From NCBI GenBank assembly GCA_002269645.1, contig NIVC01000144.1:1-64000 (forward strand): a stretch of DNA of 64,000 nt. Direction: 5' to 3'. Source of the DNA: Macrostomum lignano. Taxonomy: Eukaryota. Below, one piece after another: positions 2,625-47,129 of the stretch (positions are counted from its first letter, which is position 1; every line of letters starts with the position of its first letter). The notes beneath the pieces are model-generated. The model had not been told where the DNA came from. It ran no database searches and saw nothing but the letters and a program-made list of their open reading frames with translations. Made by a program: the position numbers and the translations under genes.

Positions 2625-2810
2625 ATACTGGAAACAGACACCGCGTCTCTCCTGTTAATAAACTTAATTCACAAAAGTGGCTTCAGAATAAGCTGGACGC
2701 CTCCTAATGATCCGCAATGGTCCAGCCCAATGAAGCGCTGAGCTCTGGGAGTTCTCTTCAGGTGCAGGACCCAGGTGCAAGACGCCGTAAGTTCCAGACC
2801 TGTGGGGCTG
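2625..2810 (-). pseudogene. Inverted fragment of the secreted PAN-like/LamG-like gene family
   Basis: Reverse complement reads PTGLELTASCTWVLHLKRTPRAQRFIGLDHCGSLGG, then after a shift SLF*SHFCELSLLTGETRCLF. Clearly homologous to copies B and C; contains an indel and a stop. Confidence 0.85.
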
Positions 2811-2969
2811 TCCTCAAATGAACAAGAAAAAGGTCTGCATTGTGTTTAACATATCCCTCTTGCTGATTTTATGAACTCAAGTGATCGTTGCTTCAAAGTT
2901 AGGGCAACTCAAAAGAAATTGTAGCGTCAAGGTAAACAAGCCGTCAAAGTTAGCGACATGCTGCAAGAG

Positions 2970-2991: not shown

Positions 2992-3116
2992 CAGAACACC
3001 TCCACTGATCAGCAGAAAGTTAAAAACTTTGATGCGATCTGATGCCGAGGCTCTCCATACTGGCAGACTCCTCTTCTACTGACTGACAGAAGCTTACAAT
3101 ACATGTACGTCACAAA

Positions 3117-4129
3117 ATGTCCAGCCTCCTACATCTCGCTGTTCTGTGCGCCCTGCTCTCGGTCTCTGACTGTTTGAACGGAGACAAAATTGCACAGCAC
3201 AAAGTAGCCAACAATGACTGCGTGAACTTGTCGCTCTCGGTGTGGCGGCAGCCGCGACCCTCCGCCTCCCTGCTCGACTGCTTCGTGTCGAGTCGGTCGT
3301 TCCGTCTCGGCAGCGTCGGCGTGGTGCAGCGGAGCAAGCGAGACGCCTCGTGCGCGTTGTTCCGCTTCGGTGAGGTGTGCCGCCTGCTCAACATGACCAG
3401 CTCGTCTACACAGACTGAGGGAGTAGCCGCTGAGAGCACCTGCGAGACCGTGGTGGACTCGGAGTACGACGCGATCGCTGCGAACGAGCACTTCAGCGCT
3501 GTGTGGGTCGGAGACAGGGGACCGGCGCTGGAGAACCTGGTGTGCGGCTCCGAGGGACAGAGGAACCCATGAAGTCGCTCAATGTGACCTGGACGAGTGA
3601 GGGCGCTCGCATGGACGGAGTCTCGTCTCGGCTGTGGGTGGACGACCCCACAGGTCTGGACTTCACGGCGTCCTACACCTGGGTGCTGCACCTGAAGAGG
3701 ACTCCTAAGGTTCAGTGCTACATTGAGCTGGACAATTGCGAATCACTAGGAAGCTCATTCTTAAGCCTCTTTTGGGAACTCAGCTTCATTACAAGCTATA
3801 TGCAATGTCTGTTTTTCTATACTGGCAGCCAAAACTGGCTCCTAAGCGGCTCTGTGCTGCCCGCTGACCCTGAGCGCTTCTTCATCACTGGCTTGACAAC
3901 CGATAAGCCGTCGGGTGAACGCCGATTTCTGCTTGGATCCGCGTTCTTGACCGAGCCGCTGGTCTCTGGCAACGGTTCCAAATTTAATTATAACGATACT
4001 GGCGCCTGCATCAAGATCGGCTGGCGGTCTCCAGGCCAGTTCATATTGAATGGCGTCATTCGCGCCGTCGCTGTGGCCAACTCGGCTGTGACTGAGCAGG
4101 CGGTGCGACAGCTGCTTCAGCAGCCCTGA
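3117..4129 (+). pseudogene. Secreted PAN-like + LamG-like protein, copy A, with a 1-bp frameshift (pseudogene or assembly indel)
   Basis: ORFs 3117-3572 and 3503-4129 join into a full 337-aa paralogue of copy B if one C is restored at 3566-3568 (CCC here, CCCC in the other copies). Confidence 0.85.
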
Positions 4130-5506: not shown

Positions 5507-5640
5507 TGTGATCCAGTGACCAGTGTGAACCAGTGACCAGTGTGAACCAGTGACCAGTGTGAACCAGTGACTAGTGTGAACCAGTGACCAGTGCGAACCA
5601 GTGACCAGTGTGAACCAGTGACCAGTGTGAACCAGTGACT
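5507..5640. repeat. 17-bp minisatellite (CCAGTGACCAGTGTGAA), ~8 copies
   Basis: Tandem periodicity; the same array recurs at 11322-11795. Confidence 0.95.
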
Positions 5641-8600: not shown

Positions 8601-8960
8601 AGGAAACATCACTGCTTCCGCTAAATATGTTGCCTCGTTAGGAGGCTGTGAACATGAAAAAAAAGCCTGTGTATTGTTCAAGCTACAATGCATCTCGCTT
8701 GCTTTTCTTTGACTCTAATGGTGATCGATCGTTGCCTCAAAGTCAGAACTCTGGCAACCCGCCGCAGAAGTTGCAGCGTCAAGAAAAACAGGCCGTCAAA
8801 ATTATAGACAGGTTGCTGGAGCCAATGAGCAACAAAGCCAATCAGGATGCTTTCACTGATCTGATCAGTGAAGTATATCTGGGACAAAACAGATACCCAA
8901 ACTTTCAAGACACGTGGCTTTTCTTCTACTCACTCACAGAAGCTCGAGACACGCAACTAA

Positions 8961-9974
8961 ATGTCCAGCCTCCTACATCTCGCTGTTCTGTGCGCCCTGC
9001 TCTCGGACTCTAACATTGTGAACGGAGACGAATTTGCACAGCACAGAGTAGCCAACAATGACTGTCTGAACTTTTCGCTGTCGGTGTGGCAGATGCCGCG
9101 ACCCTCTGCCTCCCTACTCGACTGCTTCGTGTCGAGTCGGTCGTTCCGTCTCGGCAGCGTCGGCGTGGTGCAGCGGAACAAGCGAGACGCCTCGTGCGCG
9201 CTGTTCCGCTTCGGTGAGGTGTGCCGCCTGCTCAACTTGACCAGCTCGTCTACATCGACTGAGGCAGTGGCCACTGAGAGCACATGCGAGACCGTGGTGG
9301 ACTCGGAGTACGACGCGATCGCTGCGAACGAGCACTTCAGCGCTGTGTGGGTCGGAGACAGGGGACCGGCGCTGGAGAACCTGGTGTGCGGCTCCGAGGG
9401 ACAGAGGAACCCCATGAAGTCCAGCGGTGTCTTGTGGACGAACGAAGGCGCTCGCATGGACGGAGTCTCGTCTCGGCTGTGGGTGGACGACCCCACAGGT
9501 CTGGACTTCACGGCGTCCTACACCTGGGTGCTGCACCTGAAGAGAACTCCCAAGAAACAGTGCTTCATCGAGCTGGACAATTGCGGATCAATAGGAAGCT
9601 CAGTCTTAAGCCACCTTTGGGAATTCAGCTTGATTACAGGAAAGACGCGATGTCTGTTTTCCAATATTGGCCACCAATACTGGGTCCAAAGCGGCTCTGT
9701 GCTGCCCGCCGACCCTGAGCGCTTCTTCATCGCTGGCTTGACCACCGATAAGCCGTCAGATAAACGCCGATTTCTGCTCGGATCCGCGTTCTTGACTGAG
9801 CCGCTGCACTCTGGCGGCGGTTCCGCATTCAAATTTAACGATGCTGGCGCCTGCATCAAGATCGGCTGGCGGTATCCAACTGGCGGCCTGCTTAAGGGCG
9901 TCATCCGCGCCGTTGCCATGGCAAACTCGGCTGTGACTGAGCAGGCGGTGCGGCAGCTGCTTCAGCAGTCCTAA
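8961..9974 (+). CDS. Secreted PAN-like + LamG/ConA-like protein, copy B (337 aa, intronless)
   Basis: Intact ORF with signal peptide (MSSLLHLAVLCALLS) and Cys-rich N-half. MDGVSSRLWVDDPTGLDFTASYTWVLHLK and KGVIRAVAMANSAVTEQAVRQLL resemble the start and end motifs of LamG_3-type folds; the domain call is from motif recognition only. Confidence 0.88.
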   Translation: MSSLLHLAVLCALLSDSNIVNGDEFAQHRVANNDCLNFSLSVWQMPRPSASLLDCFVSSRSFRLGSVGVVQRNKRDASCALFRFGEVCRLLNLTSSSTSTEAVATESTCETVVDSEYDAIAANEHFSAVWVGDRGPALENLVCGSEGQRNPMKSSGVLWTNEGARMDGVSSRLWVDDPTGLDFTASYTWVLHLKRTPKKQCFIELDNCGSIGSSVLSHLWEFSLITGKTRCLFSNIGHQYWVQSGSVLPADPERFFIAGLTTDKPSDKRRFLLGSAFLTEPLHSGGGSAFKFNDAGACIKIGWRYPTGGLLKGVIRAVAMANSAVTEQAVRQLLQQS

Positions 9975-11321
9975 AGCTTTATTTTTGTTTTGAGAAGTTT
10001 AAAAAGGAATAATTGTAATTTACATCATACGAGAATAATTATCTGAACTGTTTTATGTGTCTTTTTCAATAGTTATTTTACCCAGATTGACATTACGCTA
10101 TATTTCTTTATAGTTCTTGCCTTATAGGTAGCTTGAAACTATTATTTCTTTCCAGCTCCGTCTTATTTCAGCATATTTTTAGCTGAGCAGTTTACTTGCT
10201 GGTTATCTGACTCGAACGTTGTCAAAGCTGTCGTAATTTATCACTGCATGTAGAACACAACAGACTGCTGCAATGTGGTTCCAAGAAGATGATGGCCCTC
10301 ACATATAACAATAACCTTTCTATTTTGTGGAAGCAGAACTTTATTTGTCGACTGTTTATTTACCTCAATACCTTTATTTTTATTTGAAAAGTGGCAGACA
10401 TTTTTGCTATTGTCCTTCTCGACTTGCTGTAGGCCCAACTTCTCAATATTTTTGACAATATAAACCATAATACAGTTTAAATTTTTTTTGCACCATTCAA
10501 TCTTTTGCTGGCAATTTTTGTTTTTATACTGGTAAATTTTTGTACAACTTATATAGCCTCGGTCTGGGGACAGGAAGCCCTTTTTGTTTGTGTGTGGCTT
10601 CTGTGCTTGGGGCTCGGACCCTCTTTTTTGTTGCGCAACCGATTTGTCCTTGTTTTCCCTATGTAATTCTCGATGATTGCACCGGTTTTTCTCCGTTTTG
10701 CTTCTGTTGTTCACTGACCCTATTTAACAGACTCCGGATTTGCGTCGTTGGCTGTCTGAATGCTTCAATCCAGTATAAATCCTCATTTTTCCTCACTTTC
10801 CCGGCGTGCGCCACGTGATAATTGTATCTTTAGAAACAGTCAGTGACGTCAGAATACCAGAGGCCAATCAGAGAGAGGGAGTCATTGCAATGACCTTTGA
10901 GAGAGTCACGTGAATTCGCCTTAACCGTCTACGAAACTGACCATACTGAGGACGGTACCTGCATCAGCTTCTTCAAGCCTGCAGCATCTGTTCTCTCTCT
11001 CTACCTCTCTCTTTCTCTCTGTCTCTCTGTTGCTGAGTCTATAATCCTGTCTGTACATGCTTGCTTGCCTCACATGGGGTCTTAACCCACTTAGCTCTTT
11101 GCTAGGAATAAGAGTATGCTCTGATTGTCTTAATTCATTAATTTATTTACTCTATACAGAAATAATTAAAAGATCAAATGCACCGAATTATTTATTTTCT
11201 GTTTATTTTCCTCCGTAATTACCGCCATCAACTGTCTCACCCTTTTACTCGTAATTTAATTATTATTGACTTGCTAAACCGTTTTGGTGATTAAGCATAG
11301 GGAATCTGTTGGAAGATGTTA

Positions 11322-11795
11322 ACCTGTGACCAGTGTGAACCAGTGACCAGTGTGAACCAGTGACCAGTGTAAACCAGTGACCAGTGTGAACCAGTGACTA
11401 GTGTAAACCAGTGACCAATGTGAACCAGTGACTAGTGTAAACCAGTGACTAGTGTGAACCAGTGACCAGTGTGAACCAGTGACCAGTGTGAACCAGTGAC
11501 CAGTGTGAACCAGTGACCAGTGTGAACCAGGGACCAGTGTGAACCAGTGACCAGTGTGAACCAGTGACCAGTGTGAACCAGTGACCAGTGTGAACCAGTG
11601 ACCAGTGTGAACCAGTGACCAGTGTGAACCAGTGACCAGTGTGAACCAGTGACCAGTGTGAACCAGTGACCAGTGTGAACCAGTGACCAGTGTGAACCAG
11701 TGACCAGTGTGAACCAGTGACCAGTGTGAACCAGTGACCAGTGTGAACCAGTGACCAGTGTGAACCAGTGACCAATGTGAATCAGTGACCAGTGT
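11322..11795. repeat. 17-bp minisatellite, ~28 copies
   Basis: Tandem CCAGTGACCAGTGTGAA; homologous position to 5507-5640. Confidence 0.97.
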
Positions 11796-13219: not shown

Positions 13220-14251
13220 ATGTCAAGGCTCCTACATCTCGCTGTTCTGTGCGCCCTGCTCTCGGTCTCTGACTGTGTAAACGGAGACAAAACTACACAG
13301 CACAGAGTAGCCAACAATGACTGCCTGAACTTGTCGCTCTCGGTGTGGCAAATGCCGCGAGCCTCCGCCTACCTGCTCGACTGCTTCTTGTCGAGTCGGT
13401 CGTTCCGTCTCGGCAGCGTCGGCGTGGTGCAGCGGAACAAGCGAGACGCCTCGTGCGCGCTGTTCCGCTTCGGTGAGGTGTGCCGCCTGCTTAACATGAC
13501 CAGCTCGTCTACACCGACTGAGGGAGTGGCCGCTGAGAGCACTTGCGAAACCCTGGTGGACTCGGAGTACGACGCGATCGCTGCGAACGAGCACTTCAGC
13601 GCTGTGTGGGTCGGAGACAGGGGACCGGCGCTGGAGAACCTGGTGTGCGGCTCCCATGGACAGAGGAACCCCATGAGGTCCAGTGGTGTCTCATGGACGA
13701 ACGAAGGCGCTCGCATGGACGGAGTCTCGTCTCGGCTGTGGGTGGACGACCCCACAGGTCTGGACTTCACGGCGTCCTACACCTGGGTGCTGCACCTCAA
13801 GAGAACTCCAAGGGTTCAGTGCTTCATCGAGCTGGACAATTGCGGATCATTAGGAGGCAGCTCATTCTTAAGCCACTTTTGGGAATATTGCCGTGGTTCA
13901 TTAGAGACGCGATGTCTTTTTTCCAATATTGGCGGCGATAAATGGGTGGTGCACACGGGCTCTGTGCTGCCCGCCGATCCTGAGCGCTTCTTCATCGCTG
14001 GCTTGTCAACAGATAAGCCGTCAGGTGAACGCCAATTCCTGCTCGGATCCGCGTTCTTGACTGAGCCCCTGAAATCTGGCAACGGGTCCACATTAAAATA
14101 TAACGACACTGGCGCCTGCGTCAAGATCGGCTGGCGGGATGCAAGCTCGTCAGCGTTCAACGGATTTTTCCAGGGCGTCATCCGCGCAGTCGCCATGACG
14201 AACTCGGCCGTGACTGAGCAGGCGGTGCGGCAGCTGCTTCAGCAGCCCTGA
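13220..14251 (+). CDS. Secreted PAN-like + LamG/ConA-like protein, copy C (343 aa, intronless)
   Basis: Intact ORF, paralogous to copy B over its full length; signal peptide. Confidence 0.88.
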   Translation: MSRLLHLAVLCALLSVSDCVNGDKTTQHRVANNDCLNLSLSVWQMPRASAYLLDCFLSSRSFRLGSVGVVQRNKRDASCALFRFGEVCRLLNMTSSSTPTEGVAAESTCETLVDSEYDAIAANEHFSAVWVGDRGPALENLVCGSHGQRNPMRSSGVSWTNEGARMDGVSSRLWVDDPTGLDFTASYTWVLHLKRTPRVQCFIELDNCGSLGGSSFLSHFWEYCRGSLETRCLFSNIGGDKWVVHTGSVLPADPERFFIAGLSTDKPSGERQFLLGSAFLTEPLKSGNGSTLKYNDTGACVKIGWRDASSSAFNGFFQGVIRAVAMTNSAVTEQAVRQLLQQP

Positions 14252-19697: not shown

Positions 19698-20699
19698 TTA
19701 CACTCCGAAGAAAATTTTATTGATGGTTTCTTCCGGTAGATTCGTATTAGAAACCGCCACGGCTCTGACCACACCATTAAGCATGAAGGTGCCGTCATAC
19801 CGCCAGCCCACATGGATGCAGGCTCCGGCTTGGTTAAAGCTGTTCGTCCGAGCGAAGACGCCGGCAGTCGGTAGAAACTTTGATCCATAGAAGAAGCGAG
19901 TCAGGTTCTGCTGCCTCCTGAATGAGACGCCAGCGATGAAGAACTCGTTCGGGTCCGCAGGCAGCACCGAGCTGGTCTGGAATCTGGCGAAGTAACCCGG
20001 GTTCAGGAAGAGGGCGCGACTCACTCCGGACATTACTGAGTATTCTTGCAGGTGGTCGAGCATGCTGCCGGATCCGATGCAGCTGCTCAGTTCTAGAAAG
20101 CTAGCTAAACCTGGGGTTCTCTTCAGGTGCAGCACCCAGGTGTAGGATGCCGTGAAGTCCAGACCTGTGGGGTCGTCCACCCACAGCCGAGACGAGACTC
20201 CGTCCATGCGAGCGCCCTCACTCGTCCAGGTCACATTGAGCGACTTCACGGGGTTCCTCTGTCCCTCGGAGCCGCACACCAGGTTCTCCAGCGCCGGTCC
20301 CCTGTCTCCGACCCACACAGCGCTGAAGTGCTCGTTCGAAGCGATCGCGTCGTACTCCGAGTCCACCACGGTCTCGCAGCTGCTCTCAGCGGCCACTCCG
20401 GCAGTCGGTGTCGTCGAGGTCATGTTGAGCAGGCGGCACACCTCACCAAAGCGGAACAGCGCGCACGAGGCGTCTCGATTGTTCCGCTGCACAACGCCGA
20501 CGCTGCCGAGACGGAGAGAGCGACTGGACGAGAAACAGTTGATCATTGAGGCCGAGGGCTGAGGCCTCTGCCACACCGCCAACGACAAGTTCAGGCACTT
20601 ACGCTTTGACATTTTCAGCTTCGTGATTTGGAGGCTCTTTTGAGCATTGCAGCTGACTAGCAGGGCACTCAAAACTATTAAGAAGAAGACAGTATTCAT
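19698..20699 (-). CDS. Secreted PAN-like + LamG/ConA-like protein, copy D (333 aa from MNTVFFLIVL), inverted and divergent
   Basis: Intact ORF; the ATG at 20699 begins a signal peptide; core nearly identical to A-C while the N-terminus and C-half are strongly diverged. Confidence 0.88.
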   Translation of the reverse strand: MNTVFFLIVLSALLVSCNAQKSLQITKLKMSKRKCLNLSLAVWQRPQPSASMINCFSSSRSLRLGSVGVVQRNNRDASCALFRFGEVCRLLNMTSTTPTAGVAAESSCETVVDSEYDAIASNEHFSAVWVGDRGPALENLVCGSEGQRNPVKSLNVTWTSEGARMDGVSSRLWVDDPTGLDFTASYTWVLHLKRTPGLASFLELSSCIGSGSMLDHLQEYSVMSGVSRALFLNPGYFARFQTSSVLPADPNEFFIAGVSFRRQQNLTRFFYGSKFLPTAGVFARTNSFNQAGACIHVGWRYDGTFMLNGVVRAVAVSNTNLPEETINKIFFGV

Positions 20700-31054: not shown

Positions 31055-34000
31055 ATGGCGGACTCGAGCGATGCCGCGGTGAGGCCAAAAAACGAGAAAA
31101 AACGACGAACTGAACGCGGCAGATCTGGCGGCTTTTTGTCGCTTTTCGGTTGCGCCAGTTCAAAGAGTTCTTCGCCTCCTCCGATTGCTAAGTCGGAGCA
31201 GAGGACTGAGCAAGTTGCTGCTCCACCTGCTGTCAATCATAACAGCACCGCTGCTCCTGCTGCTGCAGCGGCTGCCCACTCTTCTGCTGGTGCTAAAGAG
31301 TATGCTTATTGTGCTTTGTTTTTTATAATTTTATGTACTTATTTTCAACCCCTTCTTTTCCACCACCCCACATATCTCTACCCCTCCTGTGCACCCACCC
31401 CACTTATCTCTCTACCCCTCCTGTGCACCCACCCCACTTATCTCTCTACCCCTCCTGTGCACCCACCCCACTTATCTCTCTACCCCTCCTGTGCACCCAC
31501 CCCAATTTTCTCTCTACCCCTCTTGTGAACCCACTCCAATTTTCTCTCTACCCCTCCTGTGCACCCACCCCAATTTTCTCTCTACCCCTCCTGTGCACCC
31601 ACCCCACTTATCTCTACCCCTCCTGTGCACCCACCCCAATTTTCTCTCTACCCCTCCTGTGCACCCACCCCAATTTTCTCTCTACCCCTCCTGTGCACCC
31701 ACCCCAATTTTCTCTCTACCCCTCCTGTGCACCCACCCCAATTTTCTCTCTACCCCTCTTGTGAACCCACTCCAATTTTCTCTCTACCCCTCCTGTGCAC
31801 CCACCGCAATTTTCTCTCTACCCCTCCTGTGCACCCACCCCAATTTTCTCTCTACCCCTCCTGTGCACCCACCCCACTTATCTCTACCCCTCCTGTGCAC
31901 CCACCCCACTTTTCTCTCTACCCCTCTTGTGAACCCACCCCAATTTTCTCTCTACCCCTCCTGTGCACCCACCCCAATTTTCTCTCTACCCCTCCTGTGC
32001 ACCCACCTCATATCTCTCTACCCCTCCTGTGCACCGACCCCACTTATCTCTCTACACCTCCTGTGCACCCACCCCAATTTTCTCTCTACCCCTCCTGTGC
32101 GCCCACCCCAATTTTCTCTCTACCTCTCCTGTGCACCCACCCAAATTTTCTCTCTACCCCTCCTGTGCACCCACCCAAATTTTCTCTCTACCCCTCCTGT
32201 GCACCCACCCAAATTTTCTCTCTACCCCTCCTGTGCACCCACCCAAATTTTCTCTCTACCCCTCCTGTGCACCCACCCAAATTTTCTCTCTAACCCTCCT
32301 GTGCACCCACCCAAATTTTCTCTCTACCCCTCCTGTGCACCCACCCCATTCTCTCTATATCTTCTATTGGCCACCGACTTTCCAGAGCTGCAACTGTCAG
32401 CGATCAATCATTTGACCCGAAGCACGTGTACAACATGAGACACCGGAGCAGAGGCCTGGCTTTGATATTCAACTTTCAACAGTTCCTACCCGAGACCAAC
32501 CTGTCCTATCGACACGGCTCGGATAAGGACCTTAACAATGTAGTGGCCTCGTTCAAGCGGCTGCAGTTTCAGGTGCACAAGTTCAGCAACCTGTATGCTG
32601 TTGAGTTTCTTAGCCAGCTGAAACAAGGTATGGTTTTTAATTTTCGGTTTAAGAAAGAATCTCCATTTTTTCATAAAATAATTTTTGTAGTTTATTACTC
32701 TGAAATCTCACCCTTAAATGCTGAGATCTCACGTTAAGATACTGGAATCTCACCCTAAATATTAAAATCTCACCCTAAGATACTGAAATCTCATCCTAAG
32801 CTACTGATATCTCACCCTAAGCTACTGATATCTCACCCTAAGCTACTGATATCTCACCTAAAGATACTGAAATCTCACTCTAAGGTACTGAAATCTCACC
32901 ATAAGGTACTGAAATCTCTCCCTAAGATACTGAAATCTCACCCTAAGCTACTGATATCTCACCCTAAGCTACTGATATCTCACCCTAAGATACTGAAATC
33001 TCACCCTAAGATACTGAAATCTCATCCTAACGTACTGAAATCTCATCCTAAGTTACTGAAATCTCACCCTAAGATACTGGAATCTCACCTAAGATACTGA
33101 AATCTCACCGTAGGATACTGAAATCTCACCGTAGGATACTGAAATCTCACCGTAGGATTCTGAAATCTCACCGTAGGATACTGAAATCTCACCGTAGGAT
33201 ACTGAAATCTCACCGTAGGATACTGAAATCTCACCCTAACGTCCTGAAATCTTACCCTAAGATACTGAAGTCTCACTCTAAATTTGAAGTTTTCATCCGC
33301 GAGTTTTCAATCTAGGAAAGAATGCACAAAAATGTTCACAAAGATGCTTGAACGACTCCCTCGCTACTCCTGCCCAGTGTCTGAGGTGAACCACAGCGAC
33401 CACGACGCCATTGCCATAGTGATCATGTCCCACGGCGAGGAGGGCGTCATCTTTGCCAGCGACGGAGGCATCCCCCTGGTTGAGGTGTTCGAGCCTATCA
33501 GACAATGTCCCTCTCTGGTTGGCAAGCCAAAACTCTTCTTTCTGCAGGCCTGCCGTGGCAGCAAGTTCGACCCCGGCAAAGAGCAGGTAAGGATTGCTTC
33601 AATTTTGAACCTGTCAATCACTTGTGTCATTGAACAACTGGCCACTAAAACTGTTAATCACTTGTCACTTGATCTGTCATTGAACCTATCAATCACTTGC
33701 TCTTTACCTGTCACTGAACCTGTCAATCACTTGTCACTTGTTCTGTTACTGAACCTGCCAATCACCTGTCACTTGACCTGTCAATCACTTGTCACTTGTC
33801 CTGTTACTGAACCTGTCAATCACTTGTCACTTGACCTGTCACAGGACCTGTCAATCACCTGTCACTGGACCTGCCAATCACCTGTCACTTGACCTGCCAA
33901 TCACCTGTCACTTGACCTGTCACTGAACCTGCCAATCACCTGTCACTGGACCTGCCAATCACCTGTCACTTGACCTGCCAATCACCTGTCACTTGACCTG

Positions 34001-36291: not shown

Positions 36292-37165
36292 ATGGATTCT
36301 CCTAGCAACGGAGTTTTCCTGTGATTTTTCGCTGCCATTCTCATAGTAGATGTGGCGAGTCAGTCTTCGGTCAGCCAGCACAGGCAGACAGATTCAAAGT
36401 GTCTGAACGTGTCGTTGTCGGTGTGGCAGCTGCCGCAACCCTCCGCCTCCCTGCTCGACTGCTTCGTGTCGAGTCGGTCGTTCCGTCTCGGCAGCGTCGG
36501 CGTGGTGCAGCGGAACAAGCGAGACGCCTCGTGCGCGCTGTTCCGCTTCGGTGAGGTGTGCCGCCTGCTCAACTTGACCAGCTCGTCTACACCGACTGCG
36601 GGAGTGGCCGCTGAGAGCAGCTGCGACACCGTGGTGGACTCGGAGTACGACGCGATTTCTGCAAACGAGCACTTCAGCGCTGTGTGGGTCGGAGACAGGG
36701 GACCGGCGCTGGAGAACCTGGTGTGCGGCTCCCATGGACAGAGGAACCCCATGAAGTCCAGCGGTGTCTCGTGGACGAACGAAGGCGCTCGCATGGACGG
36801 AGTCTCGTCTCGGCTGTGGGTGGACGACCCCACAGGTCTGGACTTCACGGCGTCCTACACCTGGGTGCTGCTCCTGAAGAGAACACCGGGTGACCAATGT
36901 TTCATGGAGCTGTCTGCAGATGCCGCAGCGGGAGGTGGCCCAGCCGATCATTTCTGGGGGTACAGCAGCGTTCCTGGTTTGAAGCGCTGTTTGCACCTGT
37001 TTCCAGGTGCACCCATGGCTTACCAAACAGTTCGTCATTGTTGGATTGTCGTTTAACAGATCGGCGCCCAGGTGCAAGTTCTTCTTCGAGACTGCGTTTG
37101 TGCCGGAGACTTTCAACAAAACGCAAACCGTTGTGTTCAACCAAACCGATGCTGGCCGGTGCTAT
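36292..37165 (+). pseudogene. Secreted PAN-like + LamG-like protein, copy E (pseudogene)
   Basis: ATG at 36292 is in frame with ORF 36352, but TGA at 36322-36324 interrupts the signal peptide. A frameshift/deletion near 37005 leads into QFVIVGLSFNRSAPRCKFFFETAFVP (homologous to copy D); the C-terminus is lost. Confidence 0.85.
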
Positions 37166-37399
37166 AATTCAGAAAGATTTTTTTCGTTTCAAAAATTAAC
37201 AACTTGTTTCACAAGTGTTATTGTTTTGCGATTTTAATGAAAGTTGCTTAAGGAACATGTTAACAGTAAGCATTTTTGTACGAGTAGCTAAATAATGAAT
37301 ATCTAATTCGAAAAAAAAATCGTGACCTTACTTTGAGATGCTGGTCTTATCGTCAAACATTCAGTCTTCTGTTTCTGTTTCTGTCTCATGAACCGTTCG

Positions 37400-39452: not shown

Positions 39453-41819
39453 CTATTCTTCAGTGTCCGAGTCGTCATCATTTCTCCTGCACTTCTGCAC
39501 CAGAATATAGATGAACTCAAGCAGCTCAAATGTGCTCACGACGCTGATGCCGAGCCAGAGTCCCAGAGTTCCTCCAATCTGCGGGATATGGAGAAAGCAT
39601 GCAGTACTCAAATTTTTGAGCAGATGTCAAAACAGCTGCTGCCCTGTTGCTAGGGAAGAAACTGGGCAGAAGCTCAGTGCGGCCAAAGGAACCGTAGCGG
39701 GATGTCAGTGCGGCCAAAGGAACCGTAGCGGGATGTCAGTGCGGGATGTCTGAAATGCGGGAATATTGCAACCGGATGCAGCTCTCACCTCTGACAGGGC
39801 CTCAGTCCAGTGGTACTTGTACTTCTCTTCGTAAGCATCCGCCGCAGGACTCTGCAAGCTGATGCTGACTGCTGCCAGCTCTTTGGCCAGTTCGCTACGA
39901 GAAACGCAAGACGTTGCAGATTCAATAATTTTTTTTTTATAATCTTTACCCAAGAGTCGGTCAATAAAATTAAATTTTCTTAAAAAATTGAAACGGCAAT
40001 AGTCGCTCCCACGGGCTAGCAAATACAGCTGAATTTCCTGCCTGGTTTTGGTGCTGTTCCTAAATATGTGATGCTCTTTGCCATCCTCGGGCAGGAACTC
40101 GACTCCATGTCTGACTTGCGGCACCATCAGGTTCTCCCAGATCTCTTGAATGGCGCTGAACGGGGGCCACCTGCGGCTCTGCTGCCAAGGCCGTTGCTGA
40201 GTGAACTGGCACCACATCCGGTGCTGGAACTCCTTCGCCAGCTCCTCGCTTTGCCTCTGTGCGTGCTCAAACCAGTGATCATGGCAGTCAATTCTCTTGA
40301 GCACAGCATCCGATGGGGTGATCCACTCCTGTGGTGGAGCGAAGTAGCAAAGGTCGCTCGTATTTACCGAGAACGGGAGCAGGTGCGAATAGCAGCCGCA
40401 GTTGCTGTGCAGGATGCTCTGCTGTGCCTCGACTACGAAATCGGAGACGGACTTTGAGTAGGCCTTGGTGACCACGTTCAGCGAGGCGTTGGAGAAGTGC
40501 CTGACATAGTTGATGGTTTCGATTGGAGGCTCGGAGCATCTGCGGCTCGGCTTCGACATGAGTCGGTTGTGGACCGGCCTGAGTTTGATGGAGGTGCTGG
40601 TGGCTGAGGCCACGTCCACGAACTCGGTCTCTGCGGTTTTGCATGGGTTTGGCATGGGTTGTGAGACTGGTTTGGCATGGGTTGTGCGTGGGCTATGAGA
40701 CTGGTTTGCCATGGGCTGTGAGACTGGTTTGCCATGGGTTGTGCATGGGTTGTGAGACTGGTTTGGCATGGGTTGTGAGACTTTCGTGGAATGAAGCAGT
40801 TTAAACTAAAACATTAAAACTTATTAAAGGTTTATCTAAATATAAGAAAAAAGATTACTATATTGACACTAAATTAAGCAACTAATTTATTAAGTTTTGG
40901 GCTACTTTTTGCTGCAAAAAACTAATTCGCGGGTAGCGAAGCAAAATTACGCACCGCTCATCGGGAAGCTTTTCTCCTCGTGAATGAAAATGCGCAATCC
41001 AGCGGACTGCGGCTCGTTGTTCTGCAGCAACCGGTTGACGGCTTTGCTGCGTAAGAACTTGCGAGTGATGCAGCCGTCGGGCAGTGCTCCATTTGGGTAA
41101 ATTTCATACAAGTCGGGATACTTCTCGTTGCTATCGGTGAAGAGCACCATGTCCAGCTCGGCTCCCCTGCCCCCAGGACCGCTGGACGACTGCCGTGGGT
41201 CCGGGTGGAACGTGTAGCAGTTCCAGAACCGGCTGGTCTGGACAAGCGAGAAGTTCTTGTGACTGCACGGCTCGCTGTTGTAGCGGCAGCTCAGCAGCAT
41301 GGTCTCGTCGAGCTGGGAGATGTCTCTGGTGTCGCCCGATACCCACATCACGTCCAGGACCTTCTTGCACACCTTCTCAAGTCGGTTATCATAGCTTTCA
41401 TCCGATTCTTGCGGGCGCTTCTGGGTGTCCTCCTTGAACCAGTTGTCGAAGTTGCCCCAGAAGATTTCAAAGTAGTCAAACACCTCAAACTTAAACTCAT
41501 TCTTAGAGTGGAATTCAAGGAAATTTATAATAGACAGCAGAGATGCAGAAGCGGGCTTGAAGTTGCAAATTGTGACGTCGGGAAACTGGGCTCGTTCGCT
41601 CCTCAGCTTCAGCTGCGACTCAACGGAGCGCTCGGTGAATTTCTGCACCAACTTGGCCAAGTGGACGCTGCAGCCGATCAGGGCAGCTACGAACAGAAGC
41701 AGCCAGAAGAGCCGTCGAGCTGAGCCTCTGGACAGGAAGATGTGCAGCAAGCCGTGGGTTCTCGTGATGCCAGCCACCTCCTGGGCGGCACCGGTCACCG
41801 TGCGGAGTCGGTCTTGCAT
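39453..41819 (-). CDS. DEG/ENaC (amiloride-sensitive sodium channel family) subunit; exons 41819-40955, 40630-39789 (possibly split by a 147-nt GC-AG intron), 39578-39453
   Basis: N-terminal THG motif and TM1; FPDVTICN; AGLRIFIH; TM2 IGGTLGLWLGISVVSTFE containing the GxS filter; consistent splice phases. Confidence 0.9.
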
Positions 41820-44269: not shown

Positions 44270-46709
44270 CTAAGCAGAGACGGTGCTGCGGCTGCTGAGC
44301 ACGGTGACAATCTGCTCAAGTGGAATGTTGCCGTCCTCATCAGGTTCGAGCAGCTGGACCAGCTCCTCCACTTCGCTGGGGTCCATTCTGTCGCCCAGAC
44401 TCACCATGATGTAGCGGAGCTTGTCCACGTGTAGCTTGCCAGTGTCCTGCTCATCGAATACCTGCGGGTGACGGTTATGGGTGTTAGTTATAGACGTTAG
44501 ATATGGGTGTTAGATATGGATGTTAGATATGGGTGTTAGTTATAGATGTTAGATATGGGTGTTAGATATGGATGTTAGATATGTGTGTTAGATATGGCTT
44601 TTACATAAAAATGTTAGATATGGGTGCTAGATATGTGTTAGATGTAGGTTATGGATATATTCATGTATGTGTTAGATGTGGATGTTAAGTATGGGTGTTA
44701 CATACGAGTGTTAGAATGGGTGCTAGATATGTATGTTAGATATGAATTTTAGAAATATGGGTGTTAGATTCAAGTGTTAGATATGGGTATTTTATATGAG
44801 TGTCATATGTAGGTGTTACATATGGGTGTTAGATATAAACGTTAGATTTGTTTTTTAGATACATGTGTGTATGAGTGTTAGATATGGGTTTTGGATATGG
44901 GTGTTAGATATGGGTGTTAGATATGGGTGTTAGATACAGGTGTTGAATATGCATGCTAGATATGTGTTGTTAGAAATGCACATATTTGTGTTGATAATAT
45001 TCTCATAATTTGACTGTTAGACATGGAATGTTAAATTTGTTAACTAATTTACCTGGTATGCAGGGTTGTACCTAGTTATACTTTCTAATAATCCATAAAT
45101 CAATAAGCCATCAGCGTTAGTCCCTCTCAGCCTTGTCAATTTCTCAAGTTCCCGCTGTCACAGCAGTGCAGGGGTCCCAATGCAATTAAAAACAGTTGAC
45201 GGACCAATAATTCCTGGAGTAATAATGGACTTTCTGCACACACTTCTTTAACTACATGTATAGTTGATATTGTTATTGGTCCTTTTCTAGCAACCATTAG
45301 TTTTATAACTCCGTTCGAGTACCTCAATCAAAACTTACTGAGCAATTAGGAGTTAATTGAAGCTTAAAAGATAAGCCGGTTTCATTATTCTGAAGGCCTC
45401 AGCTCTTGCACTAAATTCGAAATTCAAGTCTTTCCTGCCTCTTAAAGTGAGTTTTAGAAATTCCTGAGCTACTTGAAAGAGTCCACTGCGGCAAATGATA
45501 CGAATTATCTAACAGGGAAATCTCCGTGTCTAAGACTCTAAGAGGTCTGCTTCGGTGTCTAACTCATTTTGAATTTCTAACAGGTGAATTGTAACTGCCT
45601 AACAGGTGAACTCTGTGAGCGTTTAACAGGTGAAGTCATCTTGAGTGTCTAACAGGTGACTCATCCTGAGTGTCTGACAAGTGACGCAACCTGGGTGTCT
45701 AACAGGTGACTCATCCTGAGTGTCTAACAGGTGACTCATCCTGAGTGTCTAACAGGTGACTCATTCTGAGTGTCTAACAGGTGACTCATCCTGAGTGTCT
45801 AACAGGTGACTCATCCTGAGTGTCTAACAAGTGACTCATTCTGAGTGTCTAACAGGTGACTCATCCTGAGTGTCTAACAGGTGACTCATTCTGAGTGTCT
45901 AACAGGTGACTCATCCTGAGTGTCTAACAGGTGACTCATCCTGAGTGTCTAACAGGTGACTCATTCTGAGTGTCTAACAAGTGACTCATTCTGAGTGTCT
46001 AACAAGTGACGCAACCTGGGTGTCTAACAGGTGACTCATCCTGAGTGTCTAACAGGTGACTCATTCTGAGTGTCTAACAGGTGACTCATCCTGAGTGTCT
46101 AACAGGTGACTCATCCTGAGTGTCTAACAGGTGACTCATTCTGAGTGTCTAACAGGTGACGCAACCTGAGTGTCTAACAGGTGACTCATCCTGAGTGTCT
46201 AACAGGTGACTCATCCTGAGTGTCTAACAGGTGACTCATCCTGAGTGTCTAACAGGTGACTCATCCTGAGTGTCTAACAGGTGACTCATTCTGAGTGTCT
46301 AACAGGTGACTTATCCTGAGTGTCTGACAGGTGACTCATTCTGAGTGTCTGACAGGTGACTCATCCTGAGTGTCTAACAAGTGACTCATTCTGAGTGTCT
46401 AGCGCGTCACTACCAGCCGCTCACCTTTAGAGCCTCCCGAATCTGTGTCCCAGACTCTCCTTCGTTCATCTTCTTCATCATGAGGATGGTGAACTCGGCA
46501 AAGTCCAACTCTCCGTTGCCGTCAACGTCCACCTGCCTGATGAGGCGCTGCACCTCGTCCTCCGAAGGATTCTGGCCCAGCGACCGCATCACGTCGCCGA
46601 GCTCGTTCGCCGAGATGGTGCCGCCCCCGTCGCGGTCGAACAGCAGGAAGGCCTCGCGCAGTTCTGCAATTTCATCTTCAGACAGATCGAATTCGGCCTC
46701 CGATTTCAT
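44270..46709 (-). CDS. Calmodulin-like EF-hand protein; exons 46709-46425 and 44461-44270 (~158 aa)
   Basis: [32 protein letters not shown]; [13 protein letters not shown]; exon 2 [26 protein letters not shown]. Phase-0 GT-AG intron; an upstream exon is possible. Confidence 0.88.
44475..44950. repeat. Degenerate ~13-14-bp repeat (ATATGGGTGTTAG) in the calmodulin-like intron
   Basis: Tandem periodicity. Confidence 0.9.
45590..46400. repeat. 25-bp minisatellite (AACAGGTGACTCATCCTGAGTGTCT), ~30 copies
   Basis: Tandem periodicity; most units contain TGACTCA. Confidence 0.97.
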
Positions 46710-47129
46710 GCCTGACTGGGGAAGGTCAATCTCTACAGGTGGATTATAGTTGGAGTCGCTAATCCCCAGCAACCGGAGGTTATATAACTGACTTACAGAG
46801 CCAATCAGCTTCTGGGCGAGAGAAATAAGGGAAGACAGCGAACAAAGAGGATATGGGTATGGAGTAGGAGGGGGGTGTTGATACAGATGTACTGCCAACT
46901 CAGACTCACGGATCCCAGTTTGCAAACAGACACCACCCACAGGCTTCAGGCCTTCTGCCAGTTCTTTCTCGATCGTGTGGAATTTCTCATGCTCCATTCA
47001 GCTACTGGTTTCGTGTGTCTCTCATTTCTGTGATGCACTCTGGCAGTCGTCGCCTGAGTTCACCTCTCCCAGATCCTTATTTATCTACTCTCACTCTGCT
47101 CGTGAGGCACGACAGACAGTCTCTCTGTC

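What the first reader, a model, noticed from the sequence alone, without database searches (positions are those of the whole stretch)
3560..3610. Patchwork variants across paralogues indicate gene-conversion tracts
Seen: A, B and C are sisters in their flanks and C-halves. Yet A shares AAGTCGCTCAATGTGACCTGGACGAGTGAGGGC (KSLNVTWTSEG) exactly with the distant inverted copy D, while B, C and E carry the (K/R)SSGV(S/L)WTNEG type. Other splits conflict: GSEGQ (A,B,D) vs GSHGQ (C,E); LLNMT (A,C,D) vs LLNLT (B,E); PTAGVAAESSC (D,E) vs TE(G/A)VA(A/T)ESTC (A,B,C). No single tree fits these neighbouring sites. Inference: ongoing ectopic gene conversion among cluster members, including inverted and pseudogenised copies, shuffles short cassettes, analogous to conversion-based diversification of receptor families.
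Basis: partly seen in the sequence, partly recalled or inferred. Interest (0 to 1): 0.75.

Follow-up and report, generated by a model that had tools for sequence, protein, structure and literature searches.

The report
Mosaic gene conversion among flatworm paralogues
Five neighbouring copies of a secreted lectin-like gene, probably from the flatworm Macrostomum, have kept one 490-base stretch nearly identical by copying it between copies while the rest of each gene diverged beyond recognition; one old two-state 25-base patch inside that stretch is swapped among copies. This is a clean but ordinary case of a known evolutionary process.

Summary
All four motif splits are present as described. 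The 33-mer at 3572-3604 recurs exactly only in inverted copy D (20214-20246).

No single tree fits the shared segment: Rmin is 7, PHI p=0.002-0.004, and a 3SEQ-like test gives P down to 5e-5. With the patch removed, 44 site pairs are incompatible against 4-7 in tree-only simulations (P<=0.003).

D and E share only a sharply bounded ~490-nt core with A/B/C. The core is 89-95% identical with dS 0.07-0.25, while the flanking coding sequence is saturated (dS>=2). Core GC3 is 0.80-0.85 against about 0.63 elsewhere in the genes, a footprint of GC-biased conversion.

The A/D patch is an island of old divergence (pS 0.68 against 0.08 around it). It adds or removes an N-glycosylation sequon on the first strands of a ConA-like domain. 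The same two states recur, equally mosaic, in a distant metagenomic clade.

Best reading: interlocus gene conversion that mainly homogenises, with an old dimorphism surviving inside it, possibly through selection. "Ongoing" exchange, receptor-like diversification and somatic shuffling have no support. Assembly or polishing artefacts cannot be excluded here. This is a new member of a known kind.

The parts
3117..4129 (+). Copy A: single-exon gene of the family (signal peptide, Cys-rich N-domain, ConA-like C-domain). The frame is broken by a 1-nt deletion in a C-run at 3562-3565.
   Evidence: (col 450)
3219..3707 (+). Homogenised core of A, about 490 nt (protein residues 35-197). This is the only segment that A shares with D and E at the DNA level.
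3572..3604 (+). Type-1 patch in A (KSLNVTWTSEG, with an NVT glycosylation sequon). The diagnostic differences lie at 3577-3601. It is identical to the patch in D.
8961..9974 (+). Copy B, intact, 337 aa. Core 9063-9551. Type-2 patch at 9417-9449 (KSSGVLWTNEG).
13220..14251 (+). Copy C, intact, 343 aa. Core 13322-13810. Type-2 patch at 13676-13708 (RSSGVSWTNEG). The GSHGQ codon CAT at 13655-13657 is shared with E.
19698..20699 (-). Copy D, inverted, intact, 333 aa from the ATG at 20699. Core 20112-20597. Type-1 patch at 20214-20246. Its N- and C-terminal parts cannot be aligned with A/B/C at the DNA level.
36349..37170 (+). Copy E, a pseudogene: no in-frame ATG, a frameshift near 37000, and truncated at the 3' end. 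Core 36400-36887. Type-2 patch at 36754-36786.
2632..2813 (-). Decayed inverted fragment of an A/B/C-type copy, covering the end of the core and the start of the C-terminal part. It is 76-84% identical to A/B/C and contains stop codons.

Best explanation
The five copies are old paralogues of a secreted protein family known so far only from Macrostomum lignano database proteins and unassigned metagenomic contigs. Each protein has a signal peptide, a Cys-rich N-terminal domain and a ConA-like/LamG-like beta-sandwich.

Repeated interlocus (ectopic) gene conversion has homogenised one ~490-nt segment (residues 35-197) in all copies. The tracts run from tens to a few hundred bases. They act between direct, inverted and pseudogenised copies, and probably with copies outside the window. 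The signal-peptide region and the remaining two thirds of the lectin-like domain have diverged to saturation, so they no longer offer the homology that conversion needs. Overlapping tracts with different end points leave the patchwork of shared variants.

Inside the core, a 25-nt patch on the first strands of the lectin-like domain persists in two old states: type 1 (L-N-V-T-W-T-S, with an N-glycosylation sequon) and type 2 (S-G-V-x-W-T-N, without one). It has been moved between copies independently of their flanks.

Shown: the mosaic, the dS contrast, the sharp boundaries, the raised GC3, the saturated divergence of the patch, and its recurrence in a second clade.

Inferred: that the mechanism is conversion rather than double crossover, that GC-biased repair raised GC3, and that selection keeps both patch states (about 50% likely).
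For: 1. An island of homology. D and E match A/B/C and each other only over about 490-513 nt at 89-95% identity. Identity falls from 100% to about 50% within 20-30 nt at both ends.
2. Synonymous divergence. Core dS is 0.07-0.25, while the N- and C-terminal parts are saturated (dS 2 to infinity) for A/B/C against D. Among the sisters A/B/C, core dS (0.11-0.13) is below C-terminal dS (0.18-0.34). B-E core dS (0.07) is the lowest of all pairs.
3. Core omega is about 0.4, so protein constraint cannot explain the low dS.
4. GC3 is 0.80-0.85 in the core and 0.56-0.66 in the rest of the same genes (Fisher p=8e-6 to 8e-4). Intergenic GC is 0.40-0.42. This pattern is used as a conversion footprint in PMC2720389.
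5. Incompatibility and mosaic tests are significant, with and without the patch. The windowed nearest neighbour of A switches to D in cols 405-544, and that of C switches to E in cols 385-524.
6. Patch pS is 0.68 against 0.08 in the rest of the core. Differences are clustered there (Fisher p about 1e-9). A 'peak of divergence' inside a converting region marks a selected site according to PMC3924837.
7. Replication in nine JGI metagenome contigs of a distant clade (about 26% aa identity). They show the same 3' boundary at LKRxP, core dS 0.34 against C-terminal dS 1.65, and core GC3 above C-terminal GC3 in six of six contigs. They carry the same two patch states. L002 and L010 are nearly identical over about 200 nt but carry opposite patches. 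PHI p=0.001-0.006.
8. The M. lignano gene model P0002 joins an A/B/C-type N-terminus to a D-type C-terminus through the core. P0003 is a family member whose core is not homogenised.
Against: - No orthologues from a sister species are available. The classic hallmark of concerted evolution, paralogues within a species being more alike than orthologues between species, is therefore untested.
- If the patch counts as one event, the A-D run test is not significant on its own.
- Private changes in the core are biased from GC to AT (27 against 11), and the longest identical tracts are no more than 138 nt. Conversion may therefore have slowed or stopped.
- The metagenomic replicate rests on short-read contigs that can themselves be chimeric.
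- P0002 is a draft gene model with internal frame problems.
- Recurrence of the two patch states in two clades could be convergence driven by structural coupling rather than shared ancestry.
- Raised GC3 could in principle reflect codon-usage selection.
Confidence: 0.75

Rival explanations
1. Assembly or polishing artefact. The mosaic variants were written into the consensus when short reads from one paralogue were mapped onto another during polishing, or when paralogues or homeologues of a neopolyploid genome were partly collapsed.
For: If the window comes from a M. lignano assembly such as Mlig_3_7, that assembly was built from PacBio CLR reads with Canu and polished with Pilon using Illumina DNA and RNA reads. 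It carries large redundancy (PMC5730564; neopolyploidy in PMC10733133 and PMC10468722). The patch is flanked by 68-69-nt stretches that are invariant in all copies, which is where short reads mis-map. A's frameshift is a C4-to-C3 homopolymer difference, a typical long-read error.
Against: - The main signal, a 490-nt island of homology in genes that are otherwise unalignable, cannot be produced by polishing.
- The patch states are clean, with 11-12 linked differences and no intermediates.
- Independent database proteins P0001 and P0002 carry type 1 in yet other flank contexts.
- Copies lie 4-16 kb apart with unique spacers, so long reads should resolve them.
Confidence: 0.08
2. No exchange at all. 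The core is simply under very strong constraint, on the protein or on the nucleotide sequence (for example an overlapping antisense gene or an RNA element). The shared variants are then parallel mutations.
For: Long antisense ORFs of 133-248 aa cross the core in every copy. The core is the more conserved part of the protein in the non-homogenised relative P0003 too.
Against: - Core omega is about 0.4, which is not strong protein constraint, yet dS is about ten times lower than in the flanks.
- pN/pS is lowest in the sense frame (0.40). Two different antisense frames are open at once, as expected from GC3-rich sequence.
- Rfam finds nothing in the window.
- Tree-only simulations give 4-7 incompatible pairs against 44 observed.
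- An identical 11-12-nt complex state cannot arise in parallel.
Confidence: 0.03
3. Reciprocal recombination or unequal crossing-over within the core, or duplication between divergent alleles, produced the mosaic by shuffling whole N- and C-terminal modules. Short non-reciprocal tracts were not involved.
For: P0002 combines an A/B/C-type N-terminus with a D-type C-terminus. A/B/C are a tandem triplication whose spacers share a 17-mer minisatellite.
Against: - In the window the patch and the CE codon are internal islands with A/B/C-type or unique sequence on both sides. Each would need a double crossover within 100 nt or less, which amounts to a conversion tract.
- D is inverted, so a single crossover with A would invert the intervening 16 kb rather than transfer a patch.
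- Crossing-over does not explain homogenisation of the core alone.
Confidence: 0.1
4. A programmed, possibly somatic, conversion-based diversification system like those of immune receptor or antigen families, in which silent copies donate cassettes to expressed copies.
For: A pseudogene (E) and a fragment take part in the exchange. The family has a constant part and a hypervariable part. The patch behaves like a two-state cassette in two clades.
Against: - The hypervariable region lies outside the exchanged segment.
- Exchange homogenises rather than diversifies.
- Only two cassette states exist.
- There is no donor array or dedicated expression site in 64 kb.
- The divergence between copies shows that events are rare on an evolutionary time scale.
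- No somatic data exist.
Confidence: 0.03

Closest known systems
Primate long- and middle-wave opsin genes (OPN1LW/OPN1MW): gene conversion with a selection-protected peak of divergence (Teshima & Innan 2008, as reviewed in PMC3924837)
   Same: Neighbouring paralogues are kept nearly identical by conversion, while a short stretch holding functionally different residues stays highly divergent. Here patch pS is 0.68 against 0.08 around it.
   Different: Here the divergent island is not fixed per locus but distributed mosaically among at least five copies. It toggles a glycosylation sequon rather than spectral tuning sites. Selection on it is inferred, not shown. The function of the family is unknown.
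Mosaic (partial-gene) concerted evolution with raised GC3, for example BMP8A/B, DDX19A/B and TUBG1/2 (PMC2720389)
   Same: Only part of each gene evolves in concert. The boundaries are conserved, GC3 is raised in the concerted part, and the concerted region does not coincide with a domain. Here the boundary falls inside the beta-sandwich.
   Different: The cross-species test used to define those cases could not be run here. This is a multi-copy cluster that includes inverted and dead copies, and the non-concerted part is far more divergent (saturated).
Conversion-based repertoire diversification, such as chicken Ig V pseudogene conversion (named from my own knowledge, not checked here)
   Same: Short templated tracts are copied from paralogous, partly pseudogenised copies into other copies.
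   Different: There is no acceptor/donor organisation and no somatic evidence. The exchanged part is the constant part. Only two states of the one variable patch exist.
Concanavalin A-like lectin/glucanase superfamily, Pfam Laminin_G_3 (PF13385)
   Same: The C-terminal ~190 residues are predicted as an all-beta sandwich (pLDDT mostly 73-91 by 10-residue block). Foldseek probability is 1.00 to ConA-like lectin jelly-roll domains, including the sialidase lectin domain, CBM40, domain 4 of a GH43 arabinanase and the lectin-like subdomain of clostridial toxin binding regions. Nine of 20 family members hit PF13385 (best E=1.2e-5).
   Different: The window's own proteins do not reach any Pfam threshold. 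No PDB relative is found by sequence. The N-terminal Cys-rich domain has no detectable family. No ligand is known.

Membership tests
Interlocus gene conversion / concerted evolution | A segment is much more similar between paralogues than the adjacent coding sequence, at synonymous sites | tested here: met
   Core dS is 0.07-0.25 against 2 or more in the flanking coding sequence. Only the core is alignable by BLAST.
Interlocus gene conversion / concerted evolution | Phylogenetic incongruence or mosaicism beyond what homoplasy explains | tested here: met
   PHI p=0.002-0.004 and Rmin 7. 44 incompatible pairs against 4-7 simulated. 3SEQ-like P down to 5e-5.
Interlocus gene conversion / concerted evolution | Raised GC / GC3 in the converted segment (GC-biased conversion) | tested here: met
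   GC3 is 0.80-0.85 against 0.56-0.66, Fisher p<=8e-4 in all four full-length copies. The same direction is seen in six of six contigs of the distant clade.
Interlocus gene conversion / concerted evolution | Paralogues within a species are more alike than orthologues between species | not testable with these tools
   No Macrostomum genomes are searchable here. Exact look-ups of P0001, B and D found nothing, and DNA scans of the metagenome and genome collections found nothing.
Selection-maintained divergence peak within a converting region | A local peak of divergence, including synonymous sites, flanked by homogenised sequence | tested here: met
   11-12 differences in 25 nt against 20-26 in 462 nt, Fisher p about 1e-9. 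pS is 0.68 against 0.08.
Selection-maintained divergence peak within a converting region | The difference is functionally relevant and maintained by selection | tested here: inconclusive
   The two states differ by an N-x-T sequon and recur in a distant clade. Same-type pN across clades is 0.19 against 0.35-0.43 for cross-type comparisons. There are no functional or population data, and convergence is not excluded.
Programmed conversion-based diversification (Ig-pseudogene or antigenic-variation type) | Donor cassette array plus a dedicated acceptor or expression site | tested here: not met
   The window holds only five copies and one fragment, with no isolated cassettes.
Programmed conversion-based diversification (Ig-pseudogene or antigenic-variation type) | Exchange targets the variable, ligand-facing part and increases diversity | tested here: not met
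   The exchanged segment is the most conserved part. The hypervariable C-terminal part lies outside it.
Programmed conversion-based diversification (Ig-pseudogene or antigenic-variation type) | Somatic or high-frequency events | not testable with these tools
   This needs germline against somatic amplicons. Divergence between copies argues for rare events.
ConA-like lectin / Laminin_G_3 (PF13385) | Profile match above the curated threshold | tested here: inconclusive
   The window proteins give no hit. Nine of 20 relatives match at E<=1, best 1.2e-5. P0013 has a precomputed weak hit.
ConA-like lectin / Laminin_G_3 (PF13385) | Beta-sandwich jelly-roll fold | tested here: met
In the AF2 model, residues ~150-337 are all-beta with 10-residue block means of pLDDT mostly 73-91. 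252 PDB matches have E<=0.001, and the top ones are ConA-like lectin domains.

The most novel reading that the evidence does not exclude
The family has a constant/variable architecture: a homogenised N-terminal module and a hypervariable two thirds of a lectin-like domain. On this reading, an ancient two-state mini-cassette that adds or removes one N-glycan next to the variable face is kept by balancing selection. Short-tract conversion, together with crossover in the core, re-assorts it among paralogues. The result would be combinatorial diversity in a lineage-restricted recognition family with an immune, reproductive or adhesive role. The dimorphism would predate the split of two clades that are now only about 26% identical.
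Probability: 0.2. Interest if true: 0.6.

Novelty: new member of a known kind. Interest (0 to 1): 0.4.

Why it matters
This is a clear example of partial-gene concerted evolution in a flatworm. It shows every classical footprint within 64 kb: a sharp island of homology, a tenfold dS contrast, raised GC3, and a divergence peak.

It has practical consequences for work on Macrostomum:
- Trees, orthology calls and duplication dates based on this family will be wrong unless the core is excluded.
- RNAi, in situ probes or short reads that target the core will hit all paralogues.
- Polishing and variant calling in this region need long reads.

It also flags an uncharacterised, lineage-restricted family of secreted lectin-like proteins. 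The family has a fast-evolving C-terminal part (omega 0.7-2.4 just after the boundary) and a recurrent glycosylation dimorphism. That makes it a reasonable candidate for a recognition function worth an expression and knock-down test.

Tried and rejected
- Pfam on the window proteins gave no hit. Pfam on the N-terminal Cys-rich domain alone at E<=10 gave nothing meaningful. My impression of a PAN/apple-like cysteine spacing is therefore unsupported.
- PDB profile searches with the whole-family alignment and with the C-terminal-domain alignment gave no real hits.
- The first AlphaFold run, with a 5-sequence alignment, was unusable (pLDDT 28).
- Exact-protein look-ups of P0001, B and D found nothing on record.
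- A word-indexed protein search with the core alone gave 0 hits.
- Scans of metagenome and prokaryotic genome contigs for the invariant 30-mer gave 0 hits. A scan for the distant clade's patch context returned only a contig already held.
- Rfam found nothing in the window.
- Antisense coding as a cause of nucleotide conservation is rejected.
- Extra diverged copies or isolated cassettes in the window: none.
- Quasi-palindrome templating of the patch: a 9-nt inverted repeat, GAAGTCCAG/CTGGACTTC, is perfect only in type 2. It could explain at most 2-3 of the 11-12 differences.
- The bacterial promoter/terminator scan is irrelevant for a eukaryotic locus.
- Literature searches found no description of this family in Macrostomum.

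Full report
WHAT IS THERE

The window is eukaryotic. It is rich in minisatellites (47 TRF rows). It also carries animal genes: a tubulin-like ORF, a DEG/ENaC channel exon, an EF-hand exon and a caspase fragment.

The closest protein relatives of the genes in question are M. lignano proteins in UniRef, NCBI and MetaClust. The window is therefore most likely from Macrostomum lignano or a close relative. That is an inference, and the published M. lignano genome is likewise repeat-rich (PMC5730564).

The finding sits in copy A of a five-copy family of single-exon genes of about 337-343 codons:
- A, 3117-4129 (+). Its frame is broken by a one-base deletion in a C-run at 3562-3565.
- B, 8961-9974 (+), intact.
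- C, 13220-14251 (+), intact.
- D, 19698-20699 (-), intact and inverted.
- E, about 36349-37170 (+). It has no ATG, a frameshift and a 3' truncation.
- A decayed inverted fragment at 2632-2813.

No further copies or isolated cassettes exist in the window.

One point of logic needs correcting. AD|BCE is compatible with both ABD|CE and ACD|BE. The true four-gamete conflicts are CE against BE, and DE|ABC against all the others.

The shared segment has 77 variable and 23 informative sites, which define seven different splits:
- 130 of 253 informative-site pairs are incompatible, Rmin is 7, and PHI p=0.002-0.004.
- A GENECONV-like run test gives A-D p=1.5e-4.
- A 3SEQ-like test makes A a mosaic of B/C/E-like and D-like sequence (P=5e-5 to 2.5e-4) and makes D a mosaic of A and E (P=8.5e-4).
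- These tests lean on the clustered patch, so I removed it and simulated evolution on the best tree. The observed count is 44 incompatible pairs against 3.6-7.1 expected, P<=0.003 for gamma shapes from 0.3 to effectively uniform rates.
- Windowed nearest neighbours switch as expected: A to D in cols 405-544, C to E in cols 385-524, and E to D in cols 265-364.

THE BIGGER PATTERN

D and E share with A/B/C, and with each other, only a ~490-513-nt core (A 3219-3707) at 89-95% identity. Everything else in these genes is 35-50% identical at the DNA level, which means unalignable. Identity drops from 100% to about 50% within 20-30 nt at both edges.

Core dS is 0.07-0.25, whereas the N- and C-terminal parts are saturated (dS 2 to infinity) for A/B/C against D. 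Among the sisters A/B/C, core dS (0.11-0.13) is lower than C-terminal dS (0.18-0.34). The lowest core dS of all pairs is between B and the pseudogene E (0.07).

Core omega is about 0.4, so protein constraint cannot explain the low dS. The sense frame has the lowest pN/pS of all six frames, which removes the overlapping antisense ORFs as an explanation.

GC3 is 0.80-0.85 in the core against 0.56-0.66 in the rest of the same genes (Fisher p=8e-6 to 8e-4), and intergenic GC is 0.40-0.42. Raised GC3 confined to the concerted part is the usual footprint of GC-biased gene conversion (PMC2720389).

Together these results establish partial-gene concerted evolution by interlocus conversion. D's extra divergence in cols 105-200, with 15 private differences against very few further on, fits tracts with different 5' end points.

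THE PATCH

The A/D against B/C/E difference is 11-12 substitutions in 25 nt, against 20-26 in the other 462 nt of the core (Fisher p about 1e-9). It includes synonymous changes: pS is 0.68 in the patch and 0.08 around it. It is therefore an island of old divergence that escaped homogenisation, or was imported from a divergent donor. It is not a new variant.

Type 1 (L-N-V-T-W-T-S) carries an N-x-T sequon and type 2 (S-G-V-x-W-T-N) does not.

An exhaustive profile search found 24 relatives. Some are M. lignano proteins (P0001, P0002, P0003, P0005, P0008). The rest form a clade of short JGI metagenome contigs of unknown, presumably meiofaunal, origin.

In that clade, which is about 26% identical to B, the same two states recur: N-V-T-F-T-S and G-V-E-W-T-K. 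Each state is nearly identical at the nucleotide level within its type. The states are re-assorted against the immediately flanking variants. L002 and L010 are nearly identical over about 200 nt but carry opposite patches. Upstream variant and patch type show all four combinations. PHI p=0.001-0.006.

That clade also has the same 3' boundary (LKRxP), the same dS contrast (0.34 against 1.65) and core GC3 above C-terminal GC3 in six of six contigs.

Same-type patches across the two clades are closer (pN 0.19) than different types within a clade (0.23-0.37) or across clades (0.35-0.43). This points to an old dimorphism, although convergence through structural coupling is not excluded.

A peak of divergence inside a converting region is the published signature of a site held apart by selection. 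The standard example is the opsin genes (PMC3924837).

WHAT THE PROTEIN IS

The window proteins hit no Pfam family. Nine of 20 relatives match Laminin_G_3, the ConA-like lectin family (best E=1.2e-5).

An AlphaFold model built from a 13-sequence alignment gives an all-beta C-terminal domain (residues ~150-337, 10-residue block means of pLDDT mostly 73-91). Foldseek places it with probability 1.00 among ConA-like lectin jelly-rolls.

The N-terminal region (residues 35-150) has six cysteines, is modelled poorly and has no detectable family. An N-terminal hydrophobic leader and conserved N-x-S/T sequons (my reading of the sequences) suggest secreted glycoproteins.

The patch lies on the first predicted strands of the beta-sandwich (residues 152-162). 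The constant/variable boundary at residue 197 cuts through the domain rather than between domains. That fits a limit set by recombination and loss of homology, possibly reinforced by selection for C-terminal diversity. Omega is 0.74-2.4 for residues 198-262 among A/B/C.

P0002 joins an A/B/C-type N-terminus to a D-type C-terminus through the core. This suggests that the core also serves as a crossover site that shuffles modules, although P0002 is only a draft gene model. P0003 shows what a non-homogenised core looks like.

WHAT IS NOT SUPPORTED

'Ongoing' exchange is not supported. The longest identical tracts between copies are 69-138 nt, and private core changes are biased from GC to AT (27 against 11). 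Both fit conversion that is infrequent or has slowed.

'Diversification like receptor families' is not supported either. The exchanged part is the constant part, only two patch states exist, and there is no donor array. Nothing bears on somatic events.

CAVEATS

I could not inspect reads. If the window derives from a Canu assembly polished with Pilon from a neopolyploid genome (PMC5730564, PMC10733133), then small-scale variant swaps and A's homopolymer frameshift could be artefacts. The island of homology itself could not.

The metagenomic contigs may contain assembly chimeras. The cross-species test of concerted evolution could not be run.

VERDICT

The feature is real and statistically supported. 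It is best explained by interlocus gene conversion that homogenises a 490-nt core and leaves an old dimorphic patch that may be held by selection. It is a well-documented new member of a known kind, in an uncharacterised flatworm lectin-like family.

Noticed in passing
window 3562-3571: A's only frame-breaking lesion is a C4-to-C3 difference 7 nt upstream of the patch. The downstream ORF restarts exactly at Met152 (ATG at 3569) and encodes the whole lectin-like domain without a signal peptide. It could be a homopolymer sequencing error rather than a true pseudogene.
   Followed up: partly
window 2632-2813 (-): A decayed inverted fragment of an A/B/C-type copy (end of the core plus the start of the C-terminal part, most similar to C) lies about 830 nt upstream of the matching part of A. 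It is a relic of an inverted duplication.
   Followed up: partly
P0002 (UniRef100_A0A1I8H0C0, M. lignano), residues ~395-665: This gene model combines an A/B/C-type N-terminus, the core with a type-1 patch, and a D-type C-terminus. It is merged with reverse-transcriptase-like sequence and has internal frame problems. It is either a true recombinant paralogue or a draft-model artefact.
   Followed up: partly
P0026 / L004 (JGI sample 3300040801): A member of the distant clade is deposited in NCBI as a protein of a 'Kangiellaceae bacterium' MAG (MEE4248860.1). The closest identifiable relatives of the family are M. lignano proteins, so this looks like eukaryotic contamination of a bacterial bin.
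   Followed up: no
window 5507-5639 and 11317-11795: The same 17-mer minisatellite (TGTGAACCAGTGACCAG) lies downstream of A (7.8 copies) and of B (28 copies). This marks the tandem duplication unit and shows array length change since the duplication.
   Followed up: no
window 51212-52876 (+): A 554-aa single-exon ORF has divergent Tubulin and Tubulin_C domains (E=1e-13 to 1e-15) and a long acidic Gln/Glu-rich tail.
   Followed up: no
window 33284-33892 (+), 40947-41819 (-), 46410-46997 (-): A caspase-domain fragment whose ORF runs into a minisatellite, a DEG/ENaC (ASC) channel exon, and an EF-hand exon.
   Followed up: no
core of every copy, e.g. window 3110-3691 (-), 8957-9511 (-), 20152-20562 (+), 36394-37140 (-): Long antisense ORFs of 133-248 aa, in two different antisense frames, cross the GC3-rich core. 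Substitution patterns show they are a compositional by-product and not coding.
   Followed up: yes
window 9414-9422 and 9501-9509 (B); the equivalent positions in A are weaker: A perfect 9-nt inverted repeat, GAAGTCCAG / CTGGACTTC, exists only with the type-2 patch. Type 1 keeps only 6 nt of it. It could reflect a small templated change or chance.
   Followed up: partly
alignment A1, cols 105-592: Differences between copies in the core include more transversions than transitions (176 against 124 summed over pairs). That is unusual for point mutation and fits clustered, templated differences.
   Followed up: no
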